From positions 27,900,001-27,964,000 of the forward strand of contig NC_043014.1 in NCBI RefSeq assembly GCF_006345805.1: DNA of 64,000 nucleotides, read 5' to 3'. The stretch's first letter is position 1; the number at the start of each line of letters is the position of its first letter. A program made the position numbers and the translations under genes. The notes under the pieces were generated by a model. That model was not told the origin of the DNA, did no database searches, and saw only the letters and a list, made by a program, of their open reading frames with translations. The stretch comes from Octopus sinensis. Taxonomy: Eukaryota. Positions 20,786-63,816 of this stretch are shown one piece after another.

Positions 20786-21446
20786 TTATTGTTGGTGTTC
20801 TTGGTTCCAGTCTAAAAAACCTACTGTGCGACCAGGAGGGAGAGCTTTACAAGTCATACAGTTTGCACGTAACTTCTGGATACAGTAGGCAGGTATATGC
20901 CACTTGTCCATTATCAATATGGTCTGCATATTGTTCGTCTCCGTGCTGTTAGTGTATGATGCTGATGACGACACAAGGCGTGCCCCATGTGCACGCACTA
21001 ACTCACCAATTTCGACCCGTGTCAAGTAGTAGATATCCTGCAGTTCAAAGCAGCCTTTCCCTAGATACCAGATATGACCAGTTGTGCTCTTGTGTGGGTG
21101 GTAGTCTGTCTGTTTGACTGTCTCCACTAAACACTGCAGCACACCGTAATCATCTGGGCTAAGAGGTAATACCTTGATAATATCAATATGTCCAATGAGC
21201 TGGAGGTTCTTGAAGTTTGCCTGCACACCATTGTGCTCTAAAACATCAAGGAAATAGCCATCAGAATCACAGCAAGTCGGTAACATTTTCACTATATTCT
21301 CCTCATGGCGTCGAGTAATTTCAAGGCCTATTTCTTCCTTCAGACTAGGAATTTGATAAAAGTCTACTTCATCACTAAGTTGCTGTAATTCTACCAGACT
21401 ATCAGGCAGGTGAATTTTACTTGTACGAAGAAAATTTAAAATATAT
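20786..21446 (-). CDS. KCTD6/11/21-like BTB/POZ (T1) protein, terminal exon
   Basis: Polypyrimidine tract and ttccag|A acceptor; continues the BTB domain (R)YILNFLRTSKIHLPDSLVELQQLSDEVDFYQIPSL, then a C-terminal domain of about 170 aa to TAA. The 661 bp are consistent with the phase-2 intron. Confidence 0.9.
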
Positions 21447-22035
21447 CTGGAAAGTAAAAAAAAAAAAAAAAAAAACATTTAACAAAGTGATTAAAAGATG
21501 AATACAAAGTAAAATGCAACAAAAAAAATAGAAAGAGAATAAAATAAATCCTTGCAAGAAAATAGAGAATGATGGAATATTAACAAGTGGAATTGGAAAG
21601 TAACGGAGCGAAATAATGAGAGGGTAGGTAGAGAAAGAAAAAGAGAGAAAGAGGAAATTGAATTTTAACAGTTGTAATAGCAAAAGTTGTTGTCAGACAC
21701 GTATAACCATAGAACTAGTTGATGGAATAAAAACAATAGACACTGTAGTAGTAATGAATGCAGACAACTATTAACATAATCTTCATATTTACAAAGTTCT
21801 GAAGACTACAAATGGAACTATCCCAGCATATAACATGAAAGCTTTCAAATATACTATCCTCTCTTTTTAGTCTCACCTTCAACAATGTAATGAGCCTTTG
21901 AATGGCCTAGTGGACCACATTTTGAACTCTATCAACAAGGTGGTTGTTCATGAATATAAGAAAAATATACAGAGAGTGACTGTCATAAGTTTTATGGTAA
22001 CACTGTAAAACAACTATGTAAAAATCAATGTAAGC

Positions 22036-26551: not shown

Positions 26552-26612
<61 letters not shown>

Positions 26613-26781
26613 TATATATATACACACATATATATATATATATATACACATATATATATATATATACACATATATATATATATACACATATATATATATA
26701 TACACATATATATATATATATACACATATATATATATATATACACATATATATATATATATACACATATATATATATATAT

Positions 26782-26833
<52 letters not shown>

Positions 26834-26901
26834 ATACATACATATATATACATATACATATATATATACATACATATATATACATATATATATATACATA
26901 T
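26552..26901. repeat. Compound (TA)n/(CA) microsatellite
   Basis: About 350 bp of TA runs punctuated by CA/CACA. Confidence 0.97.
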
Positions 26902-27125
26902 ATCATCATCATCATCATCATTTAGCGTCCGCTTTCCATGCTAGCATGGGTTGGACGGTTCAACTGGGGTCTGTGAAGCCAGAAGGCTGCATCAGGCCCA
27001 GTCTGATCTGGCAGTGTTTCTACAGCTGGATGCCCTTCCTAACGCCAACCACTCCGTGAGTGTAGTGGGTGCTTTTTATGTGCCACCCGCACAGGTGCCA
27101 GACGGAGCTGGCAAACGGCCATGGA
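26902..27125 (-). mobile_element. RTE-type 3'-end repeat with (GAT)n tail
   Basis: Minus strand ...GGAGTGGTTGGCGTTAGGAAGGGCATCCAGCTGTAGAAAC...CAACCCATGCTAGCATGGAAAGCGGACGCTAAATGATGATG; other copies at about 1700-1900, 39470-39710, 48350-48550, 53500-53712 and 62030-62130. Confidence 0.75.
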
Positions 27126-31373: not shown

Positions 31374-31610
31374 TCATTCAGAAAGTTTTGTGTTATTTTT
31401 GAAAAATGAAAATAAAATAAATCTACTTGTATTACAATAATTTTTATTCATCAAATACCCTCCATTATTGTTAATGATTTTAGTCCATGTATTTGGTTGC
31501 TTCAAAATTCCATCCACATAGAACTGGGCTACTTTGGAGGAAAAGAAGTTATCCAAATTAATACATGATTTTTCATTCAAGGAATTTTGCAGGGGCTTAA
31601 ACAAATGAAA
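31374..31610 (-). mobile_element. mariner transposase C-terminal fragment
   Basis: FKPLQNSLNEK...DNFFSSKVAQFYVDGILKQPNTWTKIINNNGGY matches the mariner C-terminus. Confidence 0.7.
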
Positions 31611-32090
31611 TCAGATGGAGCAATGTCAGAGATGTATAATGGTGGAGAAGCTGAGATAATTAGGTAGCACAGAAGAATAACCAATGCAAAATGTGAGAGG
31701 AGAGGGACTGTATTAAGAATAAAGGATGGATATCAAGTAAAATTGTTCGAGGTAGTGAGAAAGATAACTGGTATCAGAGAAAAAGATGATAAAATATGCA
31801 GTTCTGCTCAAATATAATTACAGCAGCATTTAAGCAGAAATAATTGGTGTTGGGGATGGTTTGAGGAAGATATTGGATAAGGAGCCCAGTTGTTTGTGGA
31901 CGTTATGTATATGTGTGTGTGTGTGTAAATACATACATATATATATGTTTATTGTGTGCGTGTGTAAATACAAATATATACATGTGTGTTTGTGTAAATG
32001 TATATATATATGTATAAATGTGTGTGTGTGTAAATACATATATGTGTATAAATACATATGTGTGTGTGTGTTTTTTATTGTCTCGATTGC

Positions 32091-43557: not shown

Positions 43558-43839
43558 ATATTGCAGGCTTCTTTCAGTTTCTGTCAACCAAATACACTCA
43601 CAAGGCTCCAGTTGGTCCTGAGCTATAGAAGACACTTGTTCAGCATGACTGAATCAAAACCTCATGATTAAGAAGTAAGTTTCACCACACACCCATACTT
43701 GTGCGCATCATAAAGAAGTAGTCTAGGGTTCAGTTCCTATGCAAAGTACCTTGCTATATATAGCTATGTACACATGCATAAATACATACACTGCACACAC
43801 ACAGTTGCATATATACTTATATACATACATCAAAACATA

Positions 43840-45430
43840 CGCGCATGTACCTGTATATATACGCACGCGCGCACGTACACATACACATTACAGTACATTA
43901 CAACTACGCTTGAGGATACAAAGAAACTTGTCCAAGGTTTGCATTCTAGTTAAGTATAGTTTTGGCATGTTTCGTTGACAGCGGTGGTTGAATATTTTGC
44001 GAATTGATTAATGATTTACAAGAAGGAATAAGTTGCGAGGCAATATCTAAATGTATGCATAATAGATAAGCAACAAGCGCTTCCAAAGAAAATTGTTCCT
44101 ACAGTAACAAGTAGCCATTAATGGAGCAATTCCATTCTATTTCTGTTGTCTAGAACTGAGCATTATACACACATCTAATAACAAATACATTTATAAACTT
44201 CATACAATAACCAGAAATCAGGGATCTAATCGTACTGAGGAGAGGGATTCATTTTGTACACTCTTGTAATTTTAGCTTGTAGTACTAGTGATACGCTGGT
44301 TTATGTAATTAGTCTGACAGATGAAGAATGATAATCGGTCCAACCAATTGATTTACAGCGCAATTTAAATGAATTATTTACGATGACAGCTGATTTTCTA
44401 TGTGTGCGTGCGTTAATACAACTGAACAAATTTGGTCTGATTCTATTATCTCAATGGAGACGGACAAATTCTATCCAATGAATTAAACGCACATGTAGAA
44501 GCGTTACCACCGACAGATGTTTTGACAGTCCTCATAGATACTGGCATAAATGCTGCTTCTTTTATCCATATATATATAATGCTTGCATTTATGCATATAA
44601 TATATACGAGGGATTTTCCTTTCTTTTCTAAGTAAGCATTATCTATAGTTCATTTAAAAGAACAGAACAGCAGAAATGGCATGCCTAGTGGTGTTTTCAT
44701 TTATAGGGTATATTTTTATAATATCCACATAATCTATCTGAACGTTCGAGTTAAACAAAATCTTGGAATGTCGTATATAAATACACAAAGATGTCAAACA
44801 TTCATTGTCTTCCCACGCAGTTTCTACCATTGCAACTAACAAGCAAAGTTGACAAAAATAAATAAAACAAATAAAAATAATTACAAATACCAAGAAACAA
44901 GTAAAAAAATCTCATTGTTTTATCTTGTAACAACCATCGTCGTACAATGCGGTACGCTATAAACTCATAAAAGGCAAACAAAACAAACGATGAGGTAGAT
45001 CAATGAAATTTCTCACCTACGACAGCTTGTTGTCATGTTAGAAGGTAGATAAGATAAGAAATTGTGCTGAAAAGATCACAGAACTCCGGCAAGTCAAAAA
45101 TATAAGAGATCAGAGGCAAATTACGGATTTTACTGTCGCTGCTGGTGTTTGTACTGGAGAGTAATGAGAAGGGGAGGTCACTCGCCTATTTCATTTTTTT
45201 TTTTTTTTCAGTGTGCTTATGTGTAAGTGACAGGGGGGAATAGTTTTATCTATAAATCTACCCATGCCAAACAACAACCCCCTCCTCTCTCTCCCTCCTC
45301 CTCTCATAAACGTATACCTGTTGCCTCATTTTAGACAGACAACCCACGCGTTGGAAATTGTAAAGCATGACTACTAATTCCAGGATACAGTCTATAATTT
45401 CACTCTTGCGGGAACTCAGATAAATTTTTT
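43840..45430. promoter_or_regulatory. CpG-enriched putative promoter / first-exon region
   Basis: Visibly higher CpG density in unique sequence than the flanks (ACGCACGCGCGCACG, TCGTCGTACAATGCGGTACGC, CACGCG); contains the candidate KCTD start exon. Confidence 0.45.
45017..45036 (-). CDS. Probable first coding micro-exon of the KCTD-like gene (MTTSCR)
   Basis: AACATG start context, ATG ACA ACA AGC TGT CGT AG|gtgaga strong donor; phase 2 matches the exon at 24423; lies in a CpG-rich region. Gives a 289-aa protein with a 20.6-kb first intron. Confidence 0.5.
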
Positions 45431-49149: not shown

Positions 49150-50200
49150 TTTATGTGAGCAGCACATTTCCAGTTGAGGGAGCAATACTCAAATTTGTGT
49201 CACTTAAGTTTTGTAGAATTATCAGTATCCTAAAGTGAAGAGGTAAGTCTTTAAGATTTGGTCCAGGCTATGTTAAGGATGTGGTTTTGCCAACAGAGGT
49301 CCTCTATGATCATCTGGAGAAATTGCGAAGGTTCTAGTTGGTGCTGGTCATGTTGGGTGGGTGGTGAGCCACATTGTGATGATATTTTCTTAAAGTCCTT
49401 GTGTTTTTACTGTTGAAAAAGACAATATTGGCATACCCCCTTTGGAGGATGCAGAAAAGATAACAATCATCTGCATAAAAGTGGGCATTGTTGATTGTGA
49501 TTGCAAGTTGGTCATTGATGTTTAGGTGTATGATTCTTACATCACAGTTAATAGTGTAGGACAGAAAGAGCTCTATCAACATATGCTATGATAGCACTAT
49601 CTGATAGGAAGCTACCAATTTAAAAAATGAGGGATAGATGGAGCCTGAAGGCAGGCAGTTTTGATAAGAAATTCTCATACTAGACATGATAGAAAGCTTT
49701 GATTATGGTGAAATCAACAACATTGCTTTCATTAGATTTCTCTAAGGTGACATAGAAGAGTAGATAATCAATGGATCTGACTTATTGGATGAGGAAGGTG
49801 GTTATTAAAGAGAGAAAGAGATTAAAATGTTGGAAAACATCATTAGTAATGACTGTCACCATTATCTTTGAGATACTAGAATTGAATGCAAAAGAACAGT
49901 AGTTTACAGGATCAGAGGGAGTACTTGTCTTGGGAACAGAATACACTTTGGCAGGTTTCCAAAGATCAGAATGTATCTCTGTAGATTGGGAGAGATTGAA
50001 GAGCTTAGTATGTATAGAGGCTAGCTCTAAGGTGCAATATTTGAGGGGAATAGAAGTAACATTGTCAAGATTGCAGTCCTTGTTGGAATGAAGCAAACGA
50101 GTTCTTTTGCACCTGGCATGTATGTATGCAAGGTGGTGAGATGGAGAAGGATGGATTTGGATGGAGTATAGAGTTGCATGCAAAACAAACAGTGACAGCG
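49150..50200 (-). mobile_element. CR1/Jockey-like LINE RT fragment
   Basis: LKYCTLELASIHTKLFNLS...WKPAKVYSVPK..PSDPVNY...SISKIM and HFYADD remnants. Confidence 0.7.
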
Positions 50201-50279
50201 AAGGCTTTCTTTGCTGGTGTACTGTTCAAAGTGTTGAGATAAACAGTTGGAGCTTATGTTGATATATCACCCAGAGGTT

Positions 50280-50880
50280 AGGAAGTGTATAACCTCAGGT
50301 AGAGTGTAAGGTGGTAGTCCATTGGTGTCCAATGATGACAAAATCTGTGTTCTTAGCAATGAGAGCACATGTGACTACAGTCCAAACTGGAAGCACACAG
50401 GCGCCCACAAGTGTCATAACAGTAGTCAGTTGTCTGGATTGAGGCAGATGCTGCCCTGTGACATCTGTCTCTTGTAGCAGCGAGATGCTGTCACTAGTTC
50501 TCTTTGAAGGCAGCTGCTGCTGGTGAGATGAGAGACCTCCATGCTTCACTGTCTGCAGCAAAGGCTTCAAGTTCGTGTGGACTAATGCTACTCCATTTGA
50601 GGTACTTTTCAGACTGTCATTGTACTTCTGTTTAGGCCTTTCTCATTTGCATGAGCCTTGTGTGAGTTCACTGTACAACAGCTACGTGTGGATACAACAG
50701 TCAGTCATTCTGATGACGTGGTCAGCCCAGTGTAACTGAACCTTCATCAGCATTGACTCAATGCTTGTTGAACCGGTTCTGTCTAGCACTTCTTGGTTTG
50801 TCACTCTGTCCTGCCAGCAAATACTCATGGTCCTGCACAGTGCCTTTGTGTAAAACTGTTCCAGCTGTTTGATGTGTTAG
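50280..50880 (-). mobile_element. RTE (BovB-like) LINE C-terminal fragment
   Basis: QLHWADHVIRM...LLYSELTQG...RPKQKYNDSLK. Confidence 0.7.
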
Positions 50881-50889
50881 TAGTATGGA

Positions 50890-51300
50890 GTTCATGTTTC
50901 ACATCCATAGTGTATACTATACATCATACATCCATTGTTTCCCACTTGTAAAAAGCTCTACATCAGATGAAGATATGAAAAACATGAATGGTACTGTTTG
51001 TAAAATGTTCAGGAAAGCTTGCCGCTGCCATAGTTGGCTTGAAGATGAAATCAAATGGGATACTACATTCATGTATGAGCCAAAGGAGCCTCTACACAGT
51101 CCTTCAGCTTATTAGAAATAGCAGTCAATCATTCTCATATCATACACAATCATTCTACAAAAGGGAAGACATATTGGATAATATAATCTGAAGTGCACAA
51201 TGTCTGAAAAGAAAGTCAAGGAGGTCATGGATGGAACATATTTGATCACAAATTTCTTTGAATAGGGATCACTTGAGAATAAACAACATATAAATTATTT
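50890..51300 (+). mobile_element. Helitron Rep/Helicase coding fragment
   Basis: VKSSTSDEDMKNMNGTVCKMFRKACRCHSWLEDEIKWDTTF resembles the RepHel linker consensus V.GPTSFEDL.TVNG.VC.TFREAC..LGLLEDD..WD.TL. Confidence 0.65.
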
Positions 51301-52606
51301 TCAAATTTACTTCCTGACTGACATAAATTTGCACAAATGGATTCAATGGTAATTTAGAGATATTTGCATAAACTATCTCATTTAGATACCTCGTTCTTTG
51401 ATCCAACACATCTCAGTCTTAAGTTCCCTCCATGACCCACCCATTCACTAATCACAACCGGTGAGCACTCAAATTTTTTTCTTGCTTAGCATTATGTAAA
51501 ATCTAGTGTGTAATAACCACAAATGATCAGTTAATGGCACCCTTTCATTCACTTTGTATGATCAGTATAACAGTAACAAAATTTTATTTTTCATCTTTGA
51601 TCAGTAAGTGTTCTTTCCTATTTGCTTCTGTCTAGAAATCAAAGAAAATGACTACAATTCTCTTCAAACTTTGCTCTTTTGACCTGGACATCAATGTTTT
51701 GAAACTGACCAATTTTCCATTACATTTCAGATAGATTCAGCGTTGAGTTGCCAAAGCAGAAATATCATTTTAGCAAATTTTCTGCTCAATATCAGATTTG
51801 TGTGTCAGTTGCTTGACCATAACCACTTGAGCATGTCCCCTTTGTGCATCTCTAATCACGAGCAGGAGTAGTGAGGGAACATCATAGTTATGTATTCAGA
51901 GGAATTCTTTGGGGTTTGAATAAATGTAACAAAAGCAGTTTGAAGAAAATATTAGCCTTTTTCATACTTTCTAGGAATAAGCAAATAGGAAATAACAGTT
52001 GCTACTCAAGGACAAAAATTATGTTACATGGTGTAATTATTAGGTTATGCCCTTTAATACACCATGGGAAATCATTCCATTGTCTATCAGCACTCATTGT
52101 GTGCCTATAAGATGAGATACCCTTCCTTCTTTGGGTCCTTATCGCCAAATGGAGTTATAAGAACACCATTGTGATACATGATGTCTTGGATATTTTTAGA
52201 ACCTAGTGGAACCAATCTTTCTCCAGATCTGATACAGCCAATTCTATTTTCCCAGGAGAAGTTGACCTTAGCACTGACCTGGTATTTAAATGACCCTGAA
52301 CTAATGAAAGGCAGGTTGACTTCAGAGCACAGTGAGCAAGAATGAATATTGCAAGACATTCTAAACTAACCTCTGATGACTGCCAACTTACAATCTTTAT
52401 TATATATGCAGATTCAACATTTCCATAGGGATAGGCTCTAGAAGTGGGCATTTACCTGAACAACAGAACTTTTTAGTTTATTGGAGTTTACAAGAGAAAG
52501 TCTTTTGTGAAACTAACGGATTTCTAGATTCTAGTTACACATTCTTACTGCACAACATTCATATGTGTGTGTGTGTATGTATATATATATATATATATAT
52601 ATATTT

Positions 52607-53475
52607 ATTAATCAATATAGGGTGGCAAAAAAATTTTGTAGAATTTTTTTGCCACCAGCGGCCTAGTGGGAAAAAATTAAATAGTCATAGACCATTTATA
52701 AGTTCAACATCACAATCAAGGAACGGCCATAATAGGCCATTCACCCACTAGAAATAACAGCCAAAGCTTCAACCGCAAAATAACATTAATTCCGCAAACC
52801 AGGAGAAAATTAAAAAACATTTACCCTGTAATTTCTTATACGATGCACCGTTTCATCTACTGTTTAATGGTAAACTAACCTGATTAAATTAAATCAAGCC
52901 AATCTTCCATAGGCCCTTAGATTCGTCAGTAAGAAATAGCCAGATCGGAACAGATATTTTCACGAGGCATTTCTGTCCCTGCCTCGGCAATATCTTATAA
53001 ATGGTCTATGACTATTTAATTTTTTCCCACTAGGCCGCTGGTGGCAAAAAAATTCTACAAAATTTTTTTGCCACCCTATATTGATTAATTATGAATTTTC
53101 TGGTTGATTCCGTAATGGAATCGGCAGCTTATATTTATTTGCTGCCGATAAATTTGGCGCGAGTGCGATGATTTGAAAATTTTAGGTCAGATATTGCCGA
53201 GGCAGGGACAGAAATGCCTCGTGAAAATATCTGTTCCGATCTGGCTATTTCTTACTGATGAATCTAAGGGCCTATGGAAGATTGGCTTGATTTAATTTAA
53301 TCAGGTTAGTTTACCATTAAACAGTAGATGAAACGGTGCATCGTATAAGAAATTACAGGGTAAATGTTTTTTAATTTTCTCCTGGTTTGCGGAATTAATG
53401 TTATTTTGCGGTTGAAGCTTTGGCTGTTATTTCTAGTGGGTGAATGGCCTATTATGGCCGTTCCTTGATTGTGAT
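52607..53475. mobile_element. Non-coding element with interleaved inverted repeats A-B-A'-C-B' (candidate miniature DIRS-like element)
   Basis: A 52607-52702 / A' 52994-53089 (96 bp, no mismatch seen); B 52709-52995 / B' 53189-53475 (287 bp, one mismatch seen); flanked by (TA)n on both sides. Confidence 0.55.
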
Positions 53476-53896
53476 ATATATATATATATATATCACGTAA
53501 AAAGCACCATCCGAGCATGGCCGTTTGCCAGCCTTGTCTGGCACTTAAAAAGCACCCACTTCACTCACGGAGTGGTTGGCGTTAGGAAGGGCATCCAGCC
53601 GTAGAAACTTTGCCAGATCAGACTGGGCCTAGTGCAGCCTTCTGGCTTTCCAGACCCCAGTTGAACCGTCCAACCCATGCTAGCATGGAAAACGGATGCT
53701 AAACGATGATAGTATACTTGTGTCAGTTATTTGGCATGTTTTCTCTTTGAATTAACTGCTGGGATTTTAACGTCAATTAAATTGGACATTATAAGTAACA
53801 AATTGAAAAAAAAGAGAAATGGAAACAGGCACACTAACAAGACAGTCTGAATTTCTTTCCTGACTCAAATTGCTACTTGTTAATATATTCTATCGT

Positions 53897-54280
53897 TATT
53901 TTCTTTTATCTGTTTCAATCATTAGACTGCAGCCATGCTGGGACACCACCTTGAAGAACTTTTCGTTGAATAAATCAACCCTAGGACTTTTTTTAAAGCA
54001 AGGTACTTATTCTATTGCTCTCTTTTTTTGCTGAACTGCTAGTTTATGAGAATGTAAACAAACCTATAACAGTCAAGCAGTGGTGGGGGACAGACACACA
54101 CACATATATATATAAATACTGGTCTTCTTTCAGTTTCCATCTACCAAACCCACTCACAGGGTGTTGGTTGGCCTGAGGCTATAGTAGAAAACACTTGCCT
54201 AATGTGCTGTGCAGTGGGATTGAACCGTGAACTATGTGGTTGAGAAGCAAGCTTTGTACCACACAGCCATGCCTGTGCCT
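53897..54280 (-). mobile_element. tRNA-derived SINE (OK/OR-like)
   Basis: Same family motifs, in reverse orientation. Confidence 0.8.
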
Positions 54281-55723
54281 ATTAATGTCTACTAATATTT
54301 ACATTTTACTTTTCTTTGCTAAACAATTCTAATTTCCTACACCTGTTCAGTCTTGTACATTTACTGAGTTGATCTTTCATAACTACTGTGGAAGTTACAC
54401 CATGCTGCTGAAGTTAGAATAAGACTGAAATATACCCAGAATTATCTCCTACACCTTCCTGAAAAGGGAAAATATTAGCTGTTGATTTTATACAATTATA
54501 AACTTTTGCTGTCTTATCCTTTATTTTTAATTTGCACTACTTGATATAGTGTATGTAGCCTTAAAAATGTTTTTTGTTTTAAATTTATAACTAATAACAA
54601 CTGGGTCTATCATTTATCCTTCTGTCTGTCTATGTGTATGTGTGTGTATTTATAGAGCTATACATTCAACCAAACTTTGCCAATAACACTTCCAATTGAT
54701 ACCAACTGATATATGAATCAATGAGGGAGCCTCTAAGTAATTGCTTATCCTCCTGAAATAGCAGCCAAGCTATTACATGAAAGAAAAAGATGTATTGAAA
54801 TATGCAGTCTAGGATAAACTACTGGAAAAAGACAGCATGATCATAGCTTGAACACTTTTGATCAAAGTTCTACTCAATCGAGGATGGCATGAGGACTAAT
54901 AACAACCAATTCATATATAGCAAAATCCATATTTTTTCCCACTCCATATATAACCACTTTGCAGTATATGAGGCAAATGTCTTTTACCAGAGTCGTGTTA
55001 TTGACTGAAAGCTTGTGAGTGAAATTGGACAGCTGGAAACTGTCAGATGGACATAGTGAGTCACAGCACCAAGTCTGCTTGAGGATTATGTTAAGGGTAT
55101 AGGGTGCCTGTAGAACACTCAGCAACTTAAATTACACATTATGAACCATTAGAACACTCGTTCATCAATATCTACAAGACTTTATCATCACTGTGTGTGT
55201 GTGTGTGTATTGGTGAATGTTTGTTTACAAAAGAAGAAAAAACTCAATATATAGAGTTTGTGTATTTTATTAGCAATTGAAACTTCTAGAATCATGACAA
55301 TATATGAGTAACCACAAACACATTAAAACATGTTTAATCATTGTGAATCTCTAGTCGCTAGACAAAAAGAAAAATTATTACTGTCATCTATTTACCATAT
55401 GCAGAACGTAATGTATTCATCTATTCACATATAATATTTGCACAGCTTCAATATCATATCCAGCTTTTCATTCAACAAGGAACCTTTAAGTGTACTGTTC
55501 ATTATTGCAATGACATTAAAAGGCAGTGATTTCAAAAAAAAAAAAAAAAGACATTTTATACAGTACAGCACTAATATGCAGAAATAGTAAACAAAACAAT
55601 ATATGGCATGATTCTTTTTAGAGTTTAAATGTTCATTCTATAACTGCAAGGATTTTTCTAAACCTTATACATAGGTATTTCTTCACAAACCAAAGATACA
55701 TCTTTAACAGAAATAGTGTTTAC

Positions 55724-55922
55724 CCCCTTTAACATTTACATCAACCTATCTGTTTTATATTCAAACTGGCCAGATCTGGCCTCTCATATCTACTCTACAA
55801 TGTCAATCTGAAAATAAACAGTCACATCATCAAAATCTCAATTATGAAATAATGCATGATTAATTTTATAAAATGTGAATAAATAAACATTACATTAAAC
55901 AGATAATCTGAATGCTAAAGAG
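55724..55922. mobile_element. piggyBac-type MITE, second copy
   Basis: Homologous throughout to 16356-16568; ends AATGCTAAAGAG-TTAG. Confidence 0.6.
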
Positions 55923-58702: not shown

Positions 58703-59370
58703 TCAGTGTGGTACTCGTTTATGTTTCAATAGATCATAGCTACTAGAGAAAGCTTCTGTGCAGAAATTGCATTTGAATGGCTTTTCTGCAAGATGCTGCT
58801 GAATGTGTGTGCTCCACTCTATGGTGGAAGTGAAAGTGTTTTCACAGTATTTACAGGAGTAAAGCGTACTATGTTGTCGCCGATGCATTGTTAGGGCATA
58901 GCGGCTGGAAAATGCATCTGTGCACATATCACATGCAAAAGGTTTCTTAGAACTGTGTATTTTTCGATGTGCAGCTAACTCAGATTTGCTGTTAAATGCC
59001 TCTTCACAGTTCAAACATTTAAAAGGTTTATCAGCACGGTGTGCTTTCAAGTGCATGCTCCAACTATCTACAGTATCAAATGTTTCCTTGCAATATTTGC
59101 ATTTATGAATCAGCTTTTTGAGGTGTGCAATGACATGTTTCTGCAGTCTGGAATTATCAATGAAGGCTTTGTCACAATATTGACATACAAATTTTTTTTC
59201 TCCAGTGTGAATCCGGTGATGCTTAGCTTGGTTGCTACGAGTGCTGAATGATTTGTCACAGTAGTCACACTTGAAAGGTTTCTCACCCGTGTGTGTTCGC
59301 TGGTGTTCTAATAAGTTACTGCGAATACAAAATGCCTTCTCACATTGATCACACTGATATGGCTTTTCAC
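58703..59370 (-). CDS. C2H2 zinc-finger protein, terminal exon (8 fingers)
   Basis: ttttcag|GT GAA AAG CCA acceptor completes TGEKP; 668 bp open frame to TGA with fingers CDQC, CDYC, CQYC, CKYC, CLNC, CDMC, CKYC and CNFC. The supplied track shows only the last 117 aa. Confidence 0.93.
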
Positions 59371-63151: not shown

Positions 63152-63491
63152 TGGACTAAAGTTAACCATTTTAGCAAATTTTGTAAAAATTAAATTGTGT
63201 TAGCTATCAAACACTTAATCTTCAGCTGTTGATCTTCTCTAATGATTAAAATGAAACATTAAGATTGTCAGGAATGACAATTTCAGATATTATAAAATAT
63301 CTGTTTGGACTAAAAGAACTTCAGTAACTGTTTTTCTAGTTTGTTTAATCTAAATATTATTTCCCCTTCTCATTATTAAAACCTCTAACCTATCTCGGTG
63401 CAGAGTAAGAGTGAATTGCATTGTTGAGTAGAAGTACAAATAAAGAAAACTGAAACTAATCCAGAAGGTCAATGAAAGAATTAAAACTCAC

Positions 63492-63816
63492 CTGTGTGAA
63501 ATCGTCGATGTGCTTGAAGATAGTGCCTTGTACCAAATGCTTTTGGACAGAGATCACACTGATGTGGTCTTTCCCCAGTATGACTGCGGCGATGTGCAGC
63601 TAACGTCGCCAGTATGGGAAACTTCTTGTCACATTGTTCACAATGATAAGGTTTCTCACCTGTATGGTACCGCAAATGAATGAGTAAATGAGACTTTATG
63701 CGGAAAGATTTTTCACACACCTGACAAATGAAGGTCTTAGTGTGTTTGAGAATGTGCTGTTCCAAACGATTACGACTCTTGAAAGTCTTGTTACAGAGGT
63801 TGCAATTATGAGGCAT
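63492..63816 (-). CDS. C2H2 zinc-finger protein, first coding exon (4 fingers)
   Basis: ATG at 63816 with an in-frame stop 11 codons upstream; four C2H2 fingers with HTGEKP/HTGERP linkers; CAC ACA G|gtgag phase-1 donor; exon acceptor ttacag at 63969/63968. Joined protein is 330 aa with 12 fingers. Confidence 0.9.

What the first reader, a model, noticed from the sequence alone, without database searches (positions are those of the whole stretch)
52607..53475. Young non-coding element with DIRS-like terminal architecture (A-B-A'-C-B')
Seen: a 96-bp A and its reverse complement A', and a 287-bp B and its reverse complement B', interleaved with a unique 99-bp C. B and A' overlap by a 2-nt microhomology (CT, 52994-52995). 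B and B' differ at one CpG-type transition (ATTCGTCAG vs ATTCATCAG), which argues for real, recent DNA rather than a read fold-back. CpGs are retained, there is no ORF or TSD, and it sits in (TA)n. Known: DIRS tyrosine-recombinase retroelements have inverted terminal repeats plus an internal complementary region just inside the right repeat that mirrors the outer left end, and they make no TSD. Inference: A = left extension, B/B' = ITRs, A' = ICR, with the coding region deleted, giving a miniature non-autonomous DIRS-like element. The expected right extension is missing. Alternative: template switching on a circular or tandem unit of about 490 bp (A-B-C').
Basis: partly seen in the sequence, partly recalled or inferred. 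Interest (0 to 1): 0.75.

Follow-up and report, generated by a model that had tools for sequence, protein, structure and literature searches.

The report
Young two-armed repeat insertion in octopus

Summary
A/A' (96 nt, 96/96) and B/B' (287 nt, 286/287) are interleaved inverted repeats with a unique 99-nt C and a 2-nt overlap at B|A'.

The window is Octopus sinensis chromosome CM016876.1. The orthologous site in O. vulgaris is empty, an uninterrupted (TA)n tail of a SINE-like repeat. So this is most likely a real, lineage-specific insertion, though the raw reads were not checked.

The layout reduces to one event. It is 389 nt of a 488-nt unit (A-x-B-C') joined head-to-head to the reverse complement of 482 nt of the same unit. 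The source was therefore tandem, circular or multimeric.

DIRS membership fails. The right internal complementary region is absent, there is no coding partner, and a detailed O. vulgaris repeat annotation never mentions DIRS.

The architecture matches published Penelope-like element (PLE) insertions: inverted flanking copies, a one-sided extension, a 5'-truncated body, an AT-rich simple-repeat target and a microhomology junction. PLE protein cleaves and extends both target strands in vitro. PLEs are recently active in O. vulgaris.

Against PLE: no hammerhead ribozyme, a 102-nt rather than 30-40-nt "tail", and no other copy or partner could be searched. DNA-level capture of a tandem or circular repeat at a fragile (TA)n remains a serious rival. 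Interest is modest.

The parts
52580..52606 (.). Left flank: (TA)n tract (52580-52604) plus TT (52605-52606). Part of the microsatellite tail of the SINE-like repeat that was the target.
   Evidence: O. vulgaris has one uninterrupted 31-nt TA tract here. The TT is not present at the empty site.
52607..52708 (-). A (96 nt) plus x (TTCAAC).
   Evidence: A is 96/96 complementary to A'. In the 488-nt unit, A-x directly precedes B.
52621..52656 (.). Hairpin H1 in A (15-bp stem, GGTGGCAAAAAAATT/AATTTTTTTGCCACC). Its mirror copy lies in A' at 53040-53075.
52709..52995 (-). It ends at the base of hairpin H2 (52951-52995).
   Evidence: 286/287 complementary to B'. G at 52925 is the only difference.
52994..52995 (.). 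Head-to-head junction of the two arms: a 2-nt microhomology (CT) shared by the end of B and the start of A'.
52994..53089 (+). A': the first 96 nt of the right, direct arm, which is 5'-truncated here.
53090..53188 (+). C: a single-copy 99-nt part of the unit. It holds hairpin H3 (53120-53149, 9-bp stem) and a 23-nt motif resembling the complement of a tRNA 3' end (53155-53177, untested).
   Evidence: No complementarity to either terminus.
53189..53475 (+). It ends ...CCTTGATTGTGAT. A at 53259 is the variant base, inside a CTGATGA heptamer at 53255-53261.
53476..53493 (.). Right flank: (AT)9, the remainder of the target microsatellite.
53494..53710 (-). SINE-like repeat whose (TA)n tail was the target. 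It is present with the same flanks in O. vulgaris. Other copies lie elsewhere in the window and in the loci from all three octopus species.

Best explanation
SHOWN. An 869-nt block lies inside the (TA)n tail of a SINE-like repeat in Octopus sinensis, about 7.6 kb upstream of a KCTD6-like gene. It is absent from the orthologous O. vulgaris site. It consists of two converging, oppositely oriented, 5'-truncated copies of one 488-nt non-coding, hairpin-rich unit. The right arm is A'-C-B' (482 nt). The left arm is the reverse complement of B'-x'-A' (389 nt). The arms are joined head-to-head at a 2-nt microhomology. Because they overlap in content, the template was at least 1.2 units long, so it was tandem, circular or multimeric.

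INFERRED (most likely). The block was made by target-primed reverse transcription of the kind described for Penelope-like elements (PLEs), acting on a short non-autonomous element. In this model a multimeric transcript of the unit is bound by a PLE RT/GIY-YIG protein, which cuts both strands of AT-rich simple-repeat DNA. Each 3' end then primes cDNA synthesis at an internal start site of the RNA. One start is at the end of B' (...UUGAUUGUGAU). The other is 102 nt further on, at the end of A' (...UUGAUUAAU). The two cDNAs stop short and are joined by microhomology.

On this reading B/B' are inverted 'pseudo-LTRs'. A-x is the one-sided 'tail'. A' looks like a DIRS internal complementary region only because the tail sequence recurs in the tandem template.

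The confidence of 0.4 refers to the inferred PLE-type mechanism. The shown part (a young insertion of about 1.8 units with one strand switch, not a DIRS element) I hold at about 0.85.
For: Empty orthologous site and near-identical flanks. One-event decomposition into a 488-nt unit.

Published PLE insertion anatomy: partial tandems, often an inverted 5'-truncated copy giving inverted repeats that flank the unit, a 30-40 bp extension at one end only, and a strong bias to microsatellites, with (TA)n for Naiads (PMC8557442). [quoted passage not shown]

Purified PLE protein cleaves and extends both strands of an AT-rich target. It starts reverse transcription at two internal sites of a multi-copy RNA, and this explains the tail (PMC11167929). 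Non-autonomous PLE derivatives exist as tandem units (PMC8557442; bioRxiv 10.64898/2026.07.22.740005). In O. vulgaris, 30 Penelope families with 329 insertions are recently active (PMC13282606).

Both outer ends lie just after the same hexamer, TTGATT. It occurs 4 times on this strand and never on the other. Random position pairs share this much 3.8% of the time. Both strands of the unit fold far better than shuffles (z = -7.25 and -6.8), as expected for retrozyme-like or structured templates.
Against: No RT or GIY-YIG partner, and no second copy of the unit, could be searched, because no cephalopod genome-wide DNA search was available. The family link is therefore structural only.

No hammerhead ribozyme was found. 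Rfam gives no hit at E<=10, and the single CTGATGA heptamer is not followed by a helix II/GAAA core. Canonical PLEs and retrozymes carry one. The HHR-less Naiads are reported as long inactive in cephalopods.

The 'tail' is 102 nt, not 30-40. The right arm is 6 nt short of a full unit, so no direct pLTR pair is actually seen. The TTGATT coincidence is post hoc and weak. A (TA)n tract is also a fragile, cruciform-prone site, so DNA-level repair could give the same picture.
Confidence: 0.4

Rival explanations
1. DNA-level capture or templated repair. A double-strand break in the fragile (TA)n was repaired by copying from, or ligating in, a tandem satellite or an extrachromosomal circle of a 488-bp repeat. 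One replicative template switch (FoSTeS/MMBIR or rolling-circle strand switch) at a 2-nt microhomology made the inversion. No dedicated transposition machinery is involved.
For: The source must be tandem or circular. The junction has a 2-nt microhomology. The TT at the left boundary is absent from the empty site and from the unit. The strand switch lies at the base of a 45-nt hairpin. The unit is rich in dyad symmetries. No coding capacity and no recognisable TE hallmark were found.
Against: It gives no reason for both outer ends to fall just after the same strand-specific hexamer. It also gives no reason for the product to copy the PLE layout of inverted arms plus a one-sided extension. No such satellite was seen in about 165 kb of octopus sequence examined, which is a weak test.
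Confidence: 0.25
2. Twin priming by a non-LTR (LINE) retrotransposon. A microsatellite-targeting LINE, such as the highly active Dong-R4 group, retroposed a SINE-like or read-through transcript into the (TA)n. Both target strands primed, as in L1 twin priming, giving a 5' inversion.
For: Dong-R4 has 1129 recently active insertions and SINEs 4544 in O. vulgaris. Non-LTR elements with a restriction-like endonuclease commonly target microsatellites (PMC4640811 abstract). The neighbouring SINE-like repeat itself carries a (TA)n tail. A box-like (52659-52669) and B box-like motifs with tRNA-like spacing lie on one strand; this is my reading of the sequence and is not statistically tested.
Against: Twin priming normally yields two non-overlapping pieces of one RNA, whereas here the arms share 383 nt and need a multimeric template. 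The box-like motifs lie on the strand opposite to the inferred sense strand. ARAGORN and Rfam find no tRNA-like head.
Confidence: 0.1
3. Miniature non-autonomous DIRS1-like element. B/B' are ITRs, A is the left extension, A' is the left ICR, and the coding region is deleted. It would be integrated by a tyrosine recombinase from a circular intermediate without a TSD.
For: The ITRs are perfect. A' is complementary to the left tip and lies to the left of the right ITR. The element starts with ATT, the commonest DIRS1-like start. DIRS1-like elements exist in molluscs (Aplysia, Lottia).
Against: The right ICR and circular junction are absent. The element does not end in NTT. A left extension is known only in fungi and amoebozoa and reaches 64 nt at most, whereas here it would be 102 nt. 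There is no RT/YR. DIRS is not mentioned in the detailed O. vulgaris annotation. Pure (TA)n offers no ATT/AAT core. The whole layout is explained by one strand switch on a 488-nt unit.
Confidence: 0.04
4. Helitron-like rolling-circle transposon fragment inserted at an AT dinucleotide of the (TA)n.
For: The target is AT. Read on the minus strand, the element begins TC after an A, and a strong hairpin lies 14 nt from the other end. Helitrons are recently active in O. vulgaris (8 families, 178 insertions). A rolling circle could give products longer than one unit.
Against: There is no CTRR 3' end (the end is ...ATTGATTAAT). Terminal inverted copies with 383 nt of overlap are not a Helitron feature. 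The 'TC' depends on assigning an ambiguous A to the flank.
Confidence: 0.04
5. Assembly or library artefact in the PacBio-based O. sinensis assembly.
For: Only one assembly of this species was available. Inverted structures are a known failure mode of long-read libraries. ORFs spanning the junctions are not on record in independent read assemblies, which is uninformative rather than negative.
Against: The inserted sequence is foreign to the locus, so it is not a local fold-back. It is flanked on both sides by sequence collinear with O. vulgaris. There is no adapter at the junction. It has no match to phage, plasmid, viral, metagenome or prokaryote collections. The arms differ at one base.
Confidence: 0.07

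Closest known systems
Penelope-like element insertions with inverted pseudo-LTRs and a 'tail' (e.g. Pen2a_Av of Adineta vaga; Naiad and Poseidon elements)
   Same: Inverted copies of the 3' region flank the insert. Only one of the two inverted ends carries an extension. The arms are 5'-truncated. The join uses microhomology. The target is an AT-rich simple repeat, (TA)n, and the TSD is short or indeterminate. The template is a tandem or multi-copy unit.
   Different: The unit is only 488 nt and has no RT/GIY-YIG ORF. No hammerhead ribozyme is present. The extension is 102 nt instead of 30-40. No sequence link to any PLE could be tested.
Animal non-LTR retrozymes (tandem, non-coding, PLE-derived units that form circular RNAs)
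   Same: A short, non-coding, highly self-paired unit that must have existed as a multimer or circle, with presumed dependence on PLE machinery.
   Different: Retrozymes are defined by a type I hammerhead ribozyme in every repeat, and none is detectable here. The unit is longer than the roughly 170-400 nt I recall for metazoan retrozymes (from memory, not checked in the papers read).
DIRS1-like tyrosine-recombinase retrotransposons
   Same: Inverted terminal repeats; an internal stretch complementary to the left tip placed before the right repeat; an ATT start.
   Different: No right ICR or circular junction, no NTT end, no coding region, an oversized left extension and a microsatellite target. 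DIRS is not mentioned in the O. vulgaris repeat annotation.
L1 twin priming (5'-inverted LINE-1 insertions)
   Same: Both strands of the target prime cDNA synthesis, and two oppositely oriented cDNAs are joined by microhomology.
   Different: Twin-primed pieces come from one linear RNA and barely overlap. There is a poly(A) tail and a clear TSD.
Templated-sequence insertions or eccDNA re-integration at fragile AT-rich repeats
   Same: Foreign, non-coding DNA is placed at a break with microhomology joins and an internal template switch.
   Different: Such events are one-off and do not predict sequence-specific ends or a family of similar insertions.

Membership tests
DIRS1-like retrotransposon | Inverted terminal repeats | tested here: met
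   B/B' are 286/287 complementary.
DIRS1-like retrotransposon | [quoted passage not shown] | tested here: met
   A' is 96/96 complementary to A. However, it matches a 96-nt 'left extension', a feature reported only in fungi and amoebozoa at 12-64 nt.
DIRS1-like retrotransposon | [quoted passage not shown] | tested here: not met
   C lies where the right ICR should be and shows no complementarity to the right terminus or to the flank (score 8 vs shuffles 6.9 +/- 1.1). The flank is orthologous host sequence, so there is no right extension.
DIRS1-like retrotransposon | Element begins and ends with the same NTT trinucleotide, complementary to the junction | tested here: not met
   It begins ATT and ends GAT. 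The rule is from PMC3266345.
DIRS1-like retrotransposon | RT/RNase H/methyltransferase and tyrosine recombinase ORFs, or a demonstrable autonomous relative with the same termini | tested here: not met
   No ORF above 70 aa. A six-frame protein search found nothing. Autonomous relatives could not be searched genome-wide.
DIRS1-like retrotransposon | No target-site duplication | tested here: inconclusive
   The target is (TA)n. The tract is 14 nt longer in total than at the empty site, which could be a TSD or microsatellite drift.
Penelope-like element type insertion (autonomous or non-autonomous) | Template organised as tandem or partial tandem copies (origin of pseudo-LTRs) | tested here: met
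   The two arms together require at least 1.2 units of a 488-nt tandem or circular template. A direct pLTR pair within one arm is not present, because the right arm is 482 of 488 nt.
Penelope-like element type insertion (autonomous or non-autonomous) | Inverted 5'-truncated copy adjacent to the direct copy, head-to-head, giving inverted repeats at the ends | tested here: met
   Left arm = rc(B'-x'-A') and right arm = A'-C-B', joined at 52994-52995. Definition.
Penelope-like element type insertion (autonomous or non-autonomous) | Short extension ('tail', 30-40 bp) at the 3' end of only one of the inverted ends, reflecting two RT start sites | tested here: inconclusive
   A one-sided extension exists (A-x, 102 nt), but it is about three times the published length.
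Penelope-like element type insertion (autonomous or non-autonomous) | Insertion into AT-rich simple sequence or a microsatellite | tested here: met
   The target is the (TA)n tail of a SINE-like repeat, and the empty site was seen in O. vulgaris.
Penelope-like element type insertion (autonomous or non-autonomous) | PLE RT plus GIY-YIG endonuclease, or 3'/pLTR similarity to an autonomous PLE of the same genome | not testable with these tools
   No cephalopod genome-wide DNA search or TE library was available. There is no PLE copy in the roughly 165 kb of octopus sequence in hand.
Penelope-like element type insertion (autonomous or non-autonomous) | Hammerhead ribozyme in the pLTR (canonical clades; absent in Naiads) | tested here: not met
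   No Hammerhead family at E<=10. The only CTGANGA (53255-53261) lacks the helix II/GAAA core.
Non-LTR retrozyme | Type I hammerhead ribozyme in every tandem unit | tested here: not met
Helitron / Helentron | 5'-TC ... CTRR-3' with a 3' subterminal hairpin, inserted between A and T (or Helentron termini between T and T) | tested here: not met
   The ends are ATCACAATC... and ...ATTGATTAAT on the minus strand. There is no CTRR, although a hairpin lies 14 nt from one end.
LTR retrotransposon / TRIM (1-LTR circle as source) | TG...CA LTR ends, a PBS directly after the 5' LTR, and a polypurine tract before the 3' LTR | tested here: inconclusive
   A PBS-like 23-mer lies at 53155-53177, but there is no purine run of 9 nt or more on that strand and no ...CA before it. 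No octopus tRNA was available for comparison.

The most novel reading that the evidence does not exclude
The 488-nt unit is a previously undescribed, ribozyme-less, non-coding mobile element of octopuses. It would exist as multimeric or circular transcripts and would have been mobilised very recently in O. sinensis by a Penelope-like (or other two-strand-priming) reverse transcriptase into (TA)n tracts. That would make it a cephalopod counterpart of retrozymes without the hammerhead.
Probability: 0.3. Interest if true: 0.45.

Novelty: new member of a known kind. Interest (0 to 1): 0.3.

Why it matters
If the PLE-type reading holds, this single filled/empty pair is a clean natural record of the step seen only in vitro so far: priming from both strands of an AT-rich target at two internal start sites. 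It comes with exact junctions and a known pre-insertion site. It would also point to a recently mobile non-autonomous family in Octopus sinensis. That family could serve as a marker between O. sinensis and O. vulgaris, and as a caution for repeat annotators, because the layout imitates DIRS or TIR elements. If it is a one-off repair event, it is an ordinary structural variant at a fragile microsatellite.

Tried and rejected
1. Other copies in the window: none. None in the O. vulgaris locus L001 (56 kb) or the O. bimaculoides locus L004 (45 kb). The only hit was a 20-nt chance match at one orthologous place.

2. Foreign origin. No match to plasmids or phages with blastn in distant mode. No match to viral contigs with two patterns, or to JGI metagenomes with two patterns. 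GTDB genomes gave one 20-mer hit in a Verrucomicrobia MAG. It does not extend, and about one such hit is expected by chance.

3. Coding potential and spurious ORFs elsewhere. The 58-aa frame and a six-frame concatenate of the unit found no protein. Exact look-ups of four small ORFs, two of them spanning the junctions, were not on record.

4. RNA families. Nothing at gathering thresholds in the window. Only chance-level microRNA-like hairpin hits at E<=10 in the region, with no ribozyme, tRNA or snRNA. ARAGORN found nothing.

5. Hammerhead by hand. The one CTGATGA is not followed by a usable helix II plus GAAA.

6. Outgroup state. The O. bimaculoides locus ends about 470 nt short of the site.

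7. LTR/TRIM reading from the PBS-like motif. There is no polypurine tract or TG...CA ends, so it is left as an untested lead.

8. The supplementary consensus sequences of octopus PLEs were not held.

Full report
**1. The observation**

The sequence is as described.
- A (52607-52702) and A' (52994-53089) are perfect reverse complements (96/96).
- B (52709-52995) and B' (53189-53475) are complementary at 286 of 287 positions. The exception is G at 52925 against A at 53259.
- TTCAAC (52703-52708) lies between A and B.
- C (53090-53188) is unique.
- B and A' overlap by CT (52994-52995).

No further copy of A, B or C occurs in the 64-kb window. No ORF exceeds 70 aa, and the two longest run into the flanking (TA)n. 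CpG o/e is 0.87 against a window median of 0.17. Only 1.4% of 869-nt windows reach that value, and the others lie at 43650-45200. Rfam and ARAGORN find no RNA gene.

**2. Where it is, and the empty site**

A neighbouring ORF (20786-21478, minus strand) is 100% identical to a KCTD6-like protein of Octopus. Fetching the gene's loci showed two things.
- The window is Octopus sinensis GCA_006345805.1, chromosome CM016876.1 (locus L002, 100% identity).
- The O. vulgaris orthologue (GCA_951406725.2, locus L001) aligns at 99.1-99.5% on both sides of the element but lacks it. Window 50000-52608 and 53474-55908 abut in L001 at about 2407-2424.

At that point O. vulgaris has one uninterrupted 31-nt TA tract, followed by the same SINE-like repeat. 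O. sinensis has 27 nt (25 of TA plus TT) on the left and 18 nt on the right. A target duplication of up to about 14 nt is therefore possible but cannot be told apart from microsatellite drift.

Substitution divergence between the two species over 54 kb is 0.48%. The arms differ at 1 of 383 paired positions. This is consistent with an insertion at or after the species split.

A precise loss in O. vulgaris that restored a clean (TA)n is much less likely. It is not formally excluded, because the O. bimaculoides locus I could fetch ends about 470 nt short of the site.

**3. Anatomy reduced to one event**

Define the unit as A + x + B + rc(C), which is 488 nt. The element then equals unit positions 1-389 followed by the reverse complement of B-C'-A (482 nt), overlapping by 2 nt. 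This reconstruction differs from the real sequence only at the known SNP.

Every adjacency except B|A' is therefore a normal adjacency of a circular or tandem 488-nt unit. Because A and B each occur in both arms, the template must have carried at least 1.2 units. It was tandem, circular or multimeric.

The second needs only one rearrangement.

The unit is unusually self-complementary. RNA folding gives z = -7.25 for one strand and z = -6.8 for the 482-nt right arm, which represents the other. Three strong hairpins were located:
- H1 at 52621-52656 and 53040-53075
- H2 at 52951-52995 and 53188-53233
- H3 at 53120-53149

**4. Tests of origin**

The unit has no detectable relative in any collection searched.
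- Plasmids and phages: none.
- IMG/VR viral contigs: none.
- JGI metagenomes: none.
- GTDB genomes: one non-extending 20-mer, at the level expected by chance.
- Protein collection, searched with all six frames: none.

It is thus not a vector, phage or bacterial contaminant. The inserted sequence is foreign to the locus and is flanked on both sides by collinear host sequence, which argues against a fold-back read artefact. I could not inspect raw reads.

**5. DIRS membership**

DIRS1-like elements are defined as follows (PMC3266345; PMC8969392).
- They have ITRs plus two adjacent internal complementary regions.
- The left ICR matches the start of the left terminus, and the right ICR matches the end of the right terminus and its extension.
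- The two ICRs overlap in a 3-bp circular junction.
- The element begins and ends with the same NTT trinucleotide.
- It encodes RT/RNase H/methyltransferase and a tyrosine recombinase.

Here the ITRs and a 'left ICR' are present. However, C, which occupies the place of the right ICR, has no complementarity to the right terminus (p = 0.25 against shuffles). There is no right extension, because the flank is orthologous host DNA. The element ends GAT. The 'left extension' would be 102 nt, whereas left extensions are reported only in fungi and amoebozoa at 12-64 nt. Nothing is coded. A curated repeat annotation of O. vulgaris never mentions DIRS (PMC13282606). A defining feature was tested and not met, so I do not file the element as DIRS-like.

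**6. A better structural match**

Published descriptions of Penelope-like element (PLE) insertions fit point by point.
- Copies are 5'-truncated and arranged in partial tandems.
[quoted passage not shown] - Non-autonomous derivatives occur.

These points come from PMC8557442. In Adineta vaga the typical insert has an inverted pLTR. [quoted passage not shown] It initiates reverse transcription at two internal sites of a multi-copy RNA, and the interval between those sites is the tail (PMC11167929).

Mapping onto this element, with the sense strand taken as the window + strand of A'-C-B':
- The right arm starts at the end of B' and is truncated after 482 nt.
- The left arm starts 102 nt further along the tandem template, at the end of A', and is truncated after 389 nt.
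- The two are joined head-to-head at CT.
- B/B' then correspond to inverted pLTRs and A-x to the tail.
- A' mimics an ICR only because the tail sequence recurs in the tandem template.

Two further observations are compatible. Both outer ends lie just after TTGATT (...TTGATTGTGAT and ...TTGATTAAT), a hexamer present four times on this strand and never on the other. Random pairs of positions share this much 3.8% of the time. Also, 30 Penelope families with 329 insertions are recently active in O. vulgaris.

**7. Limits of that reading**

Membership in a PLE-dependent family is not shown.
- I could not search any cephalopod genome or TE library for other copies or for a PLE with a matching 3' region. 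The consensus sequences of octopus PLEs were not available.
- No hammerhead ribozyme is present. This excludes membership of the retrozymes as defined and is atypical for canonical PLEs.
- The ribozyme-less Naiads are reported as long dead in cephalopods.
- The tail is three times the usual length.
- The TTGATT coincidence is post hoc.

**8. Rivals**

- DNA-level capture or templated repair from a tandem satellite or an eccDNA at a fragile (TA)n. It explains the tandem source, the microhomology, the extra TT and the switch at a hairpin base. It is the main alternative (0.25).
- LINE twin priming. Dong-R4 elements are very active in octopus, and LINEs with a restriction-like endonuclease often target microsatellites. 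This is possible, but it does not normally give arms that overlap by 383 nt (0.10).
- DIRS (0.04), Helitron (0.04; no CTRR end) and assembly artefact (0.07) are minor.
- A PBS-like 23-mer in C (53155-53177) hints at an LTR/TRIM-type source. It lacks a polypurine tract and TG...CA ends, so it remains an untested lead.

**9. Verdict**

The finding is most likely a real, recent, lineage-specific insertion with a well-defined empty site, though read-level confirmation is still needed. Its 'DIRS-like' look is most economically explained as two converging copies of one 488-nt repeat. The most likely mechanism is two-strand target-primed reverse transcription of PLE type acting on a non-autonomous multimeric template (confidence about 0.4). 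The general statement, that this is a young insertion of about 1.8 units with one strand switch and is not a DIRS element, I hold at about 0.85. The element is a probable new member of a known kind, and interest is modest (0.3).

Noticed in passing
window 43650-45200: This is the only other stretch with undepleted CpG (o/e 0.9-0.98). It coincides with the annotated 5' end of the KCTD6-like gene (gene = window 45036-20786, minus strand), so it is probably the gene's promoter CpG island.
   Followed up: partly
window 31568-32020: O. sinensis carries 453 nt here that O. vulgaris lacks. It is the only other large indel in 55 kb. The stretch ends in a TG/TA-rich tandem repeat of about 36 nt. Whether it is an insertion or a deletion was not examined.
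   Followed up: no
window 53494-53710 (minus), also about 26913-27085: A SINE-like repeat with a (TA)n tail. One copy supplied the target site. Another lies next to a 350-nt (AT)n at 26554-26903. Diverged copies occur in the O. bimaculoides locus. (TA)n-tailed retroposons therefore seem common here.
   Followed up: partly
window 53155-53177: TGGCGCGAGTGCGATGATTTGAA reads as the complement of a tRNA 3' end (CCA, discriminator, acceptor strand, T-stem strand, T-loop TTCAAAT), like a retroviral-type primer-binding site. No octopus tRNA was available to test it.
   Followed up: partly
window 52925 / 53259: The single B/B' difference falls on the one variable position of a CTGANGA heptamer (53255-53261), the hammerhead core box. 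No helix II/GAAA follows, so this looks coincidental.
   Followed up: yes
window 52951-52995, 53188-53233 and 52998-53018: Both 5'-truncation points of the two arms lie at the base of hairpins: the 45-nt H2 and a 9-bp hairpin at the start of A'. The unit is so hairpin-dense that this may be chance.
   Followed up: no
window 58703-59056 and 63481-63816 (minus): C2H2 zinc-finger ORFs lie on the far side of the element from the KCTD6-like gene. The insertion is intergenic, about 7.6 kb upstream of the KCTD6-like gene start.
   Followed up: no
L003 972-991: A 20-nt exact match of part of C to a Verrucomicrobia MAG contig. It does not extend, and about one such hit is expected by chance in 596 Gb.
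   Followed up: yes
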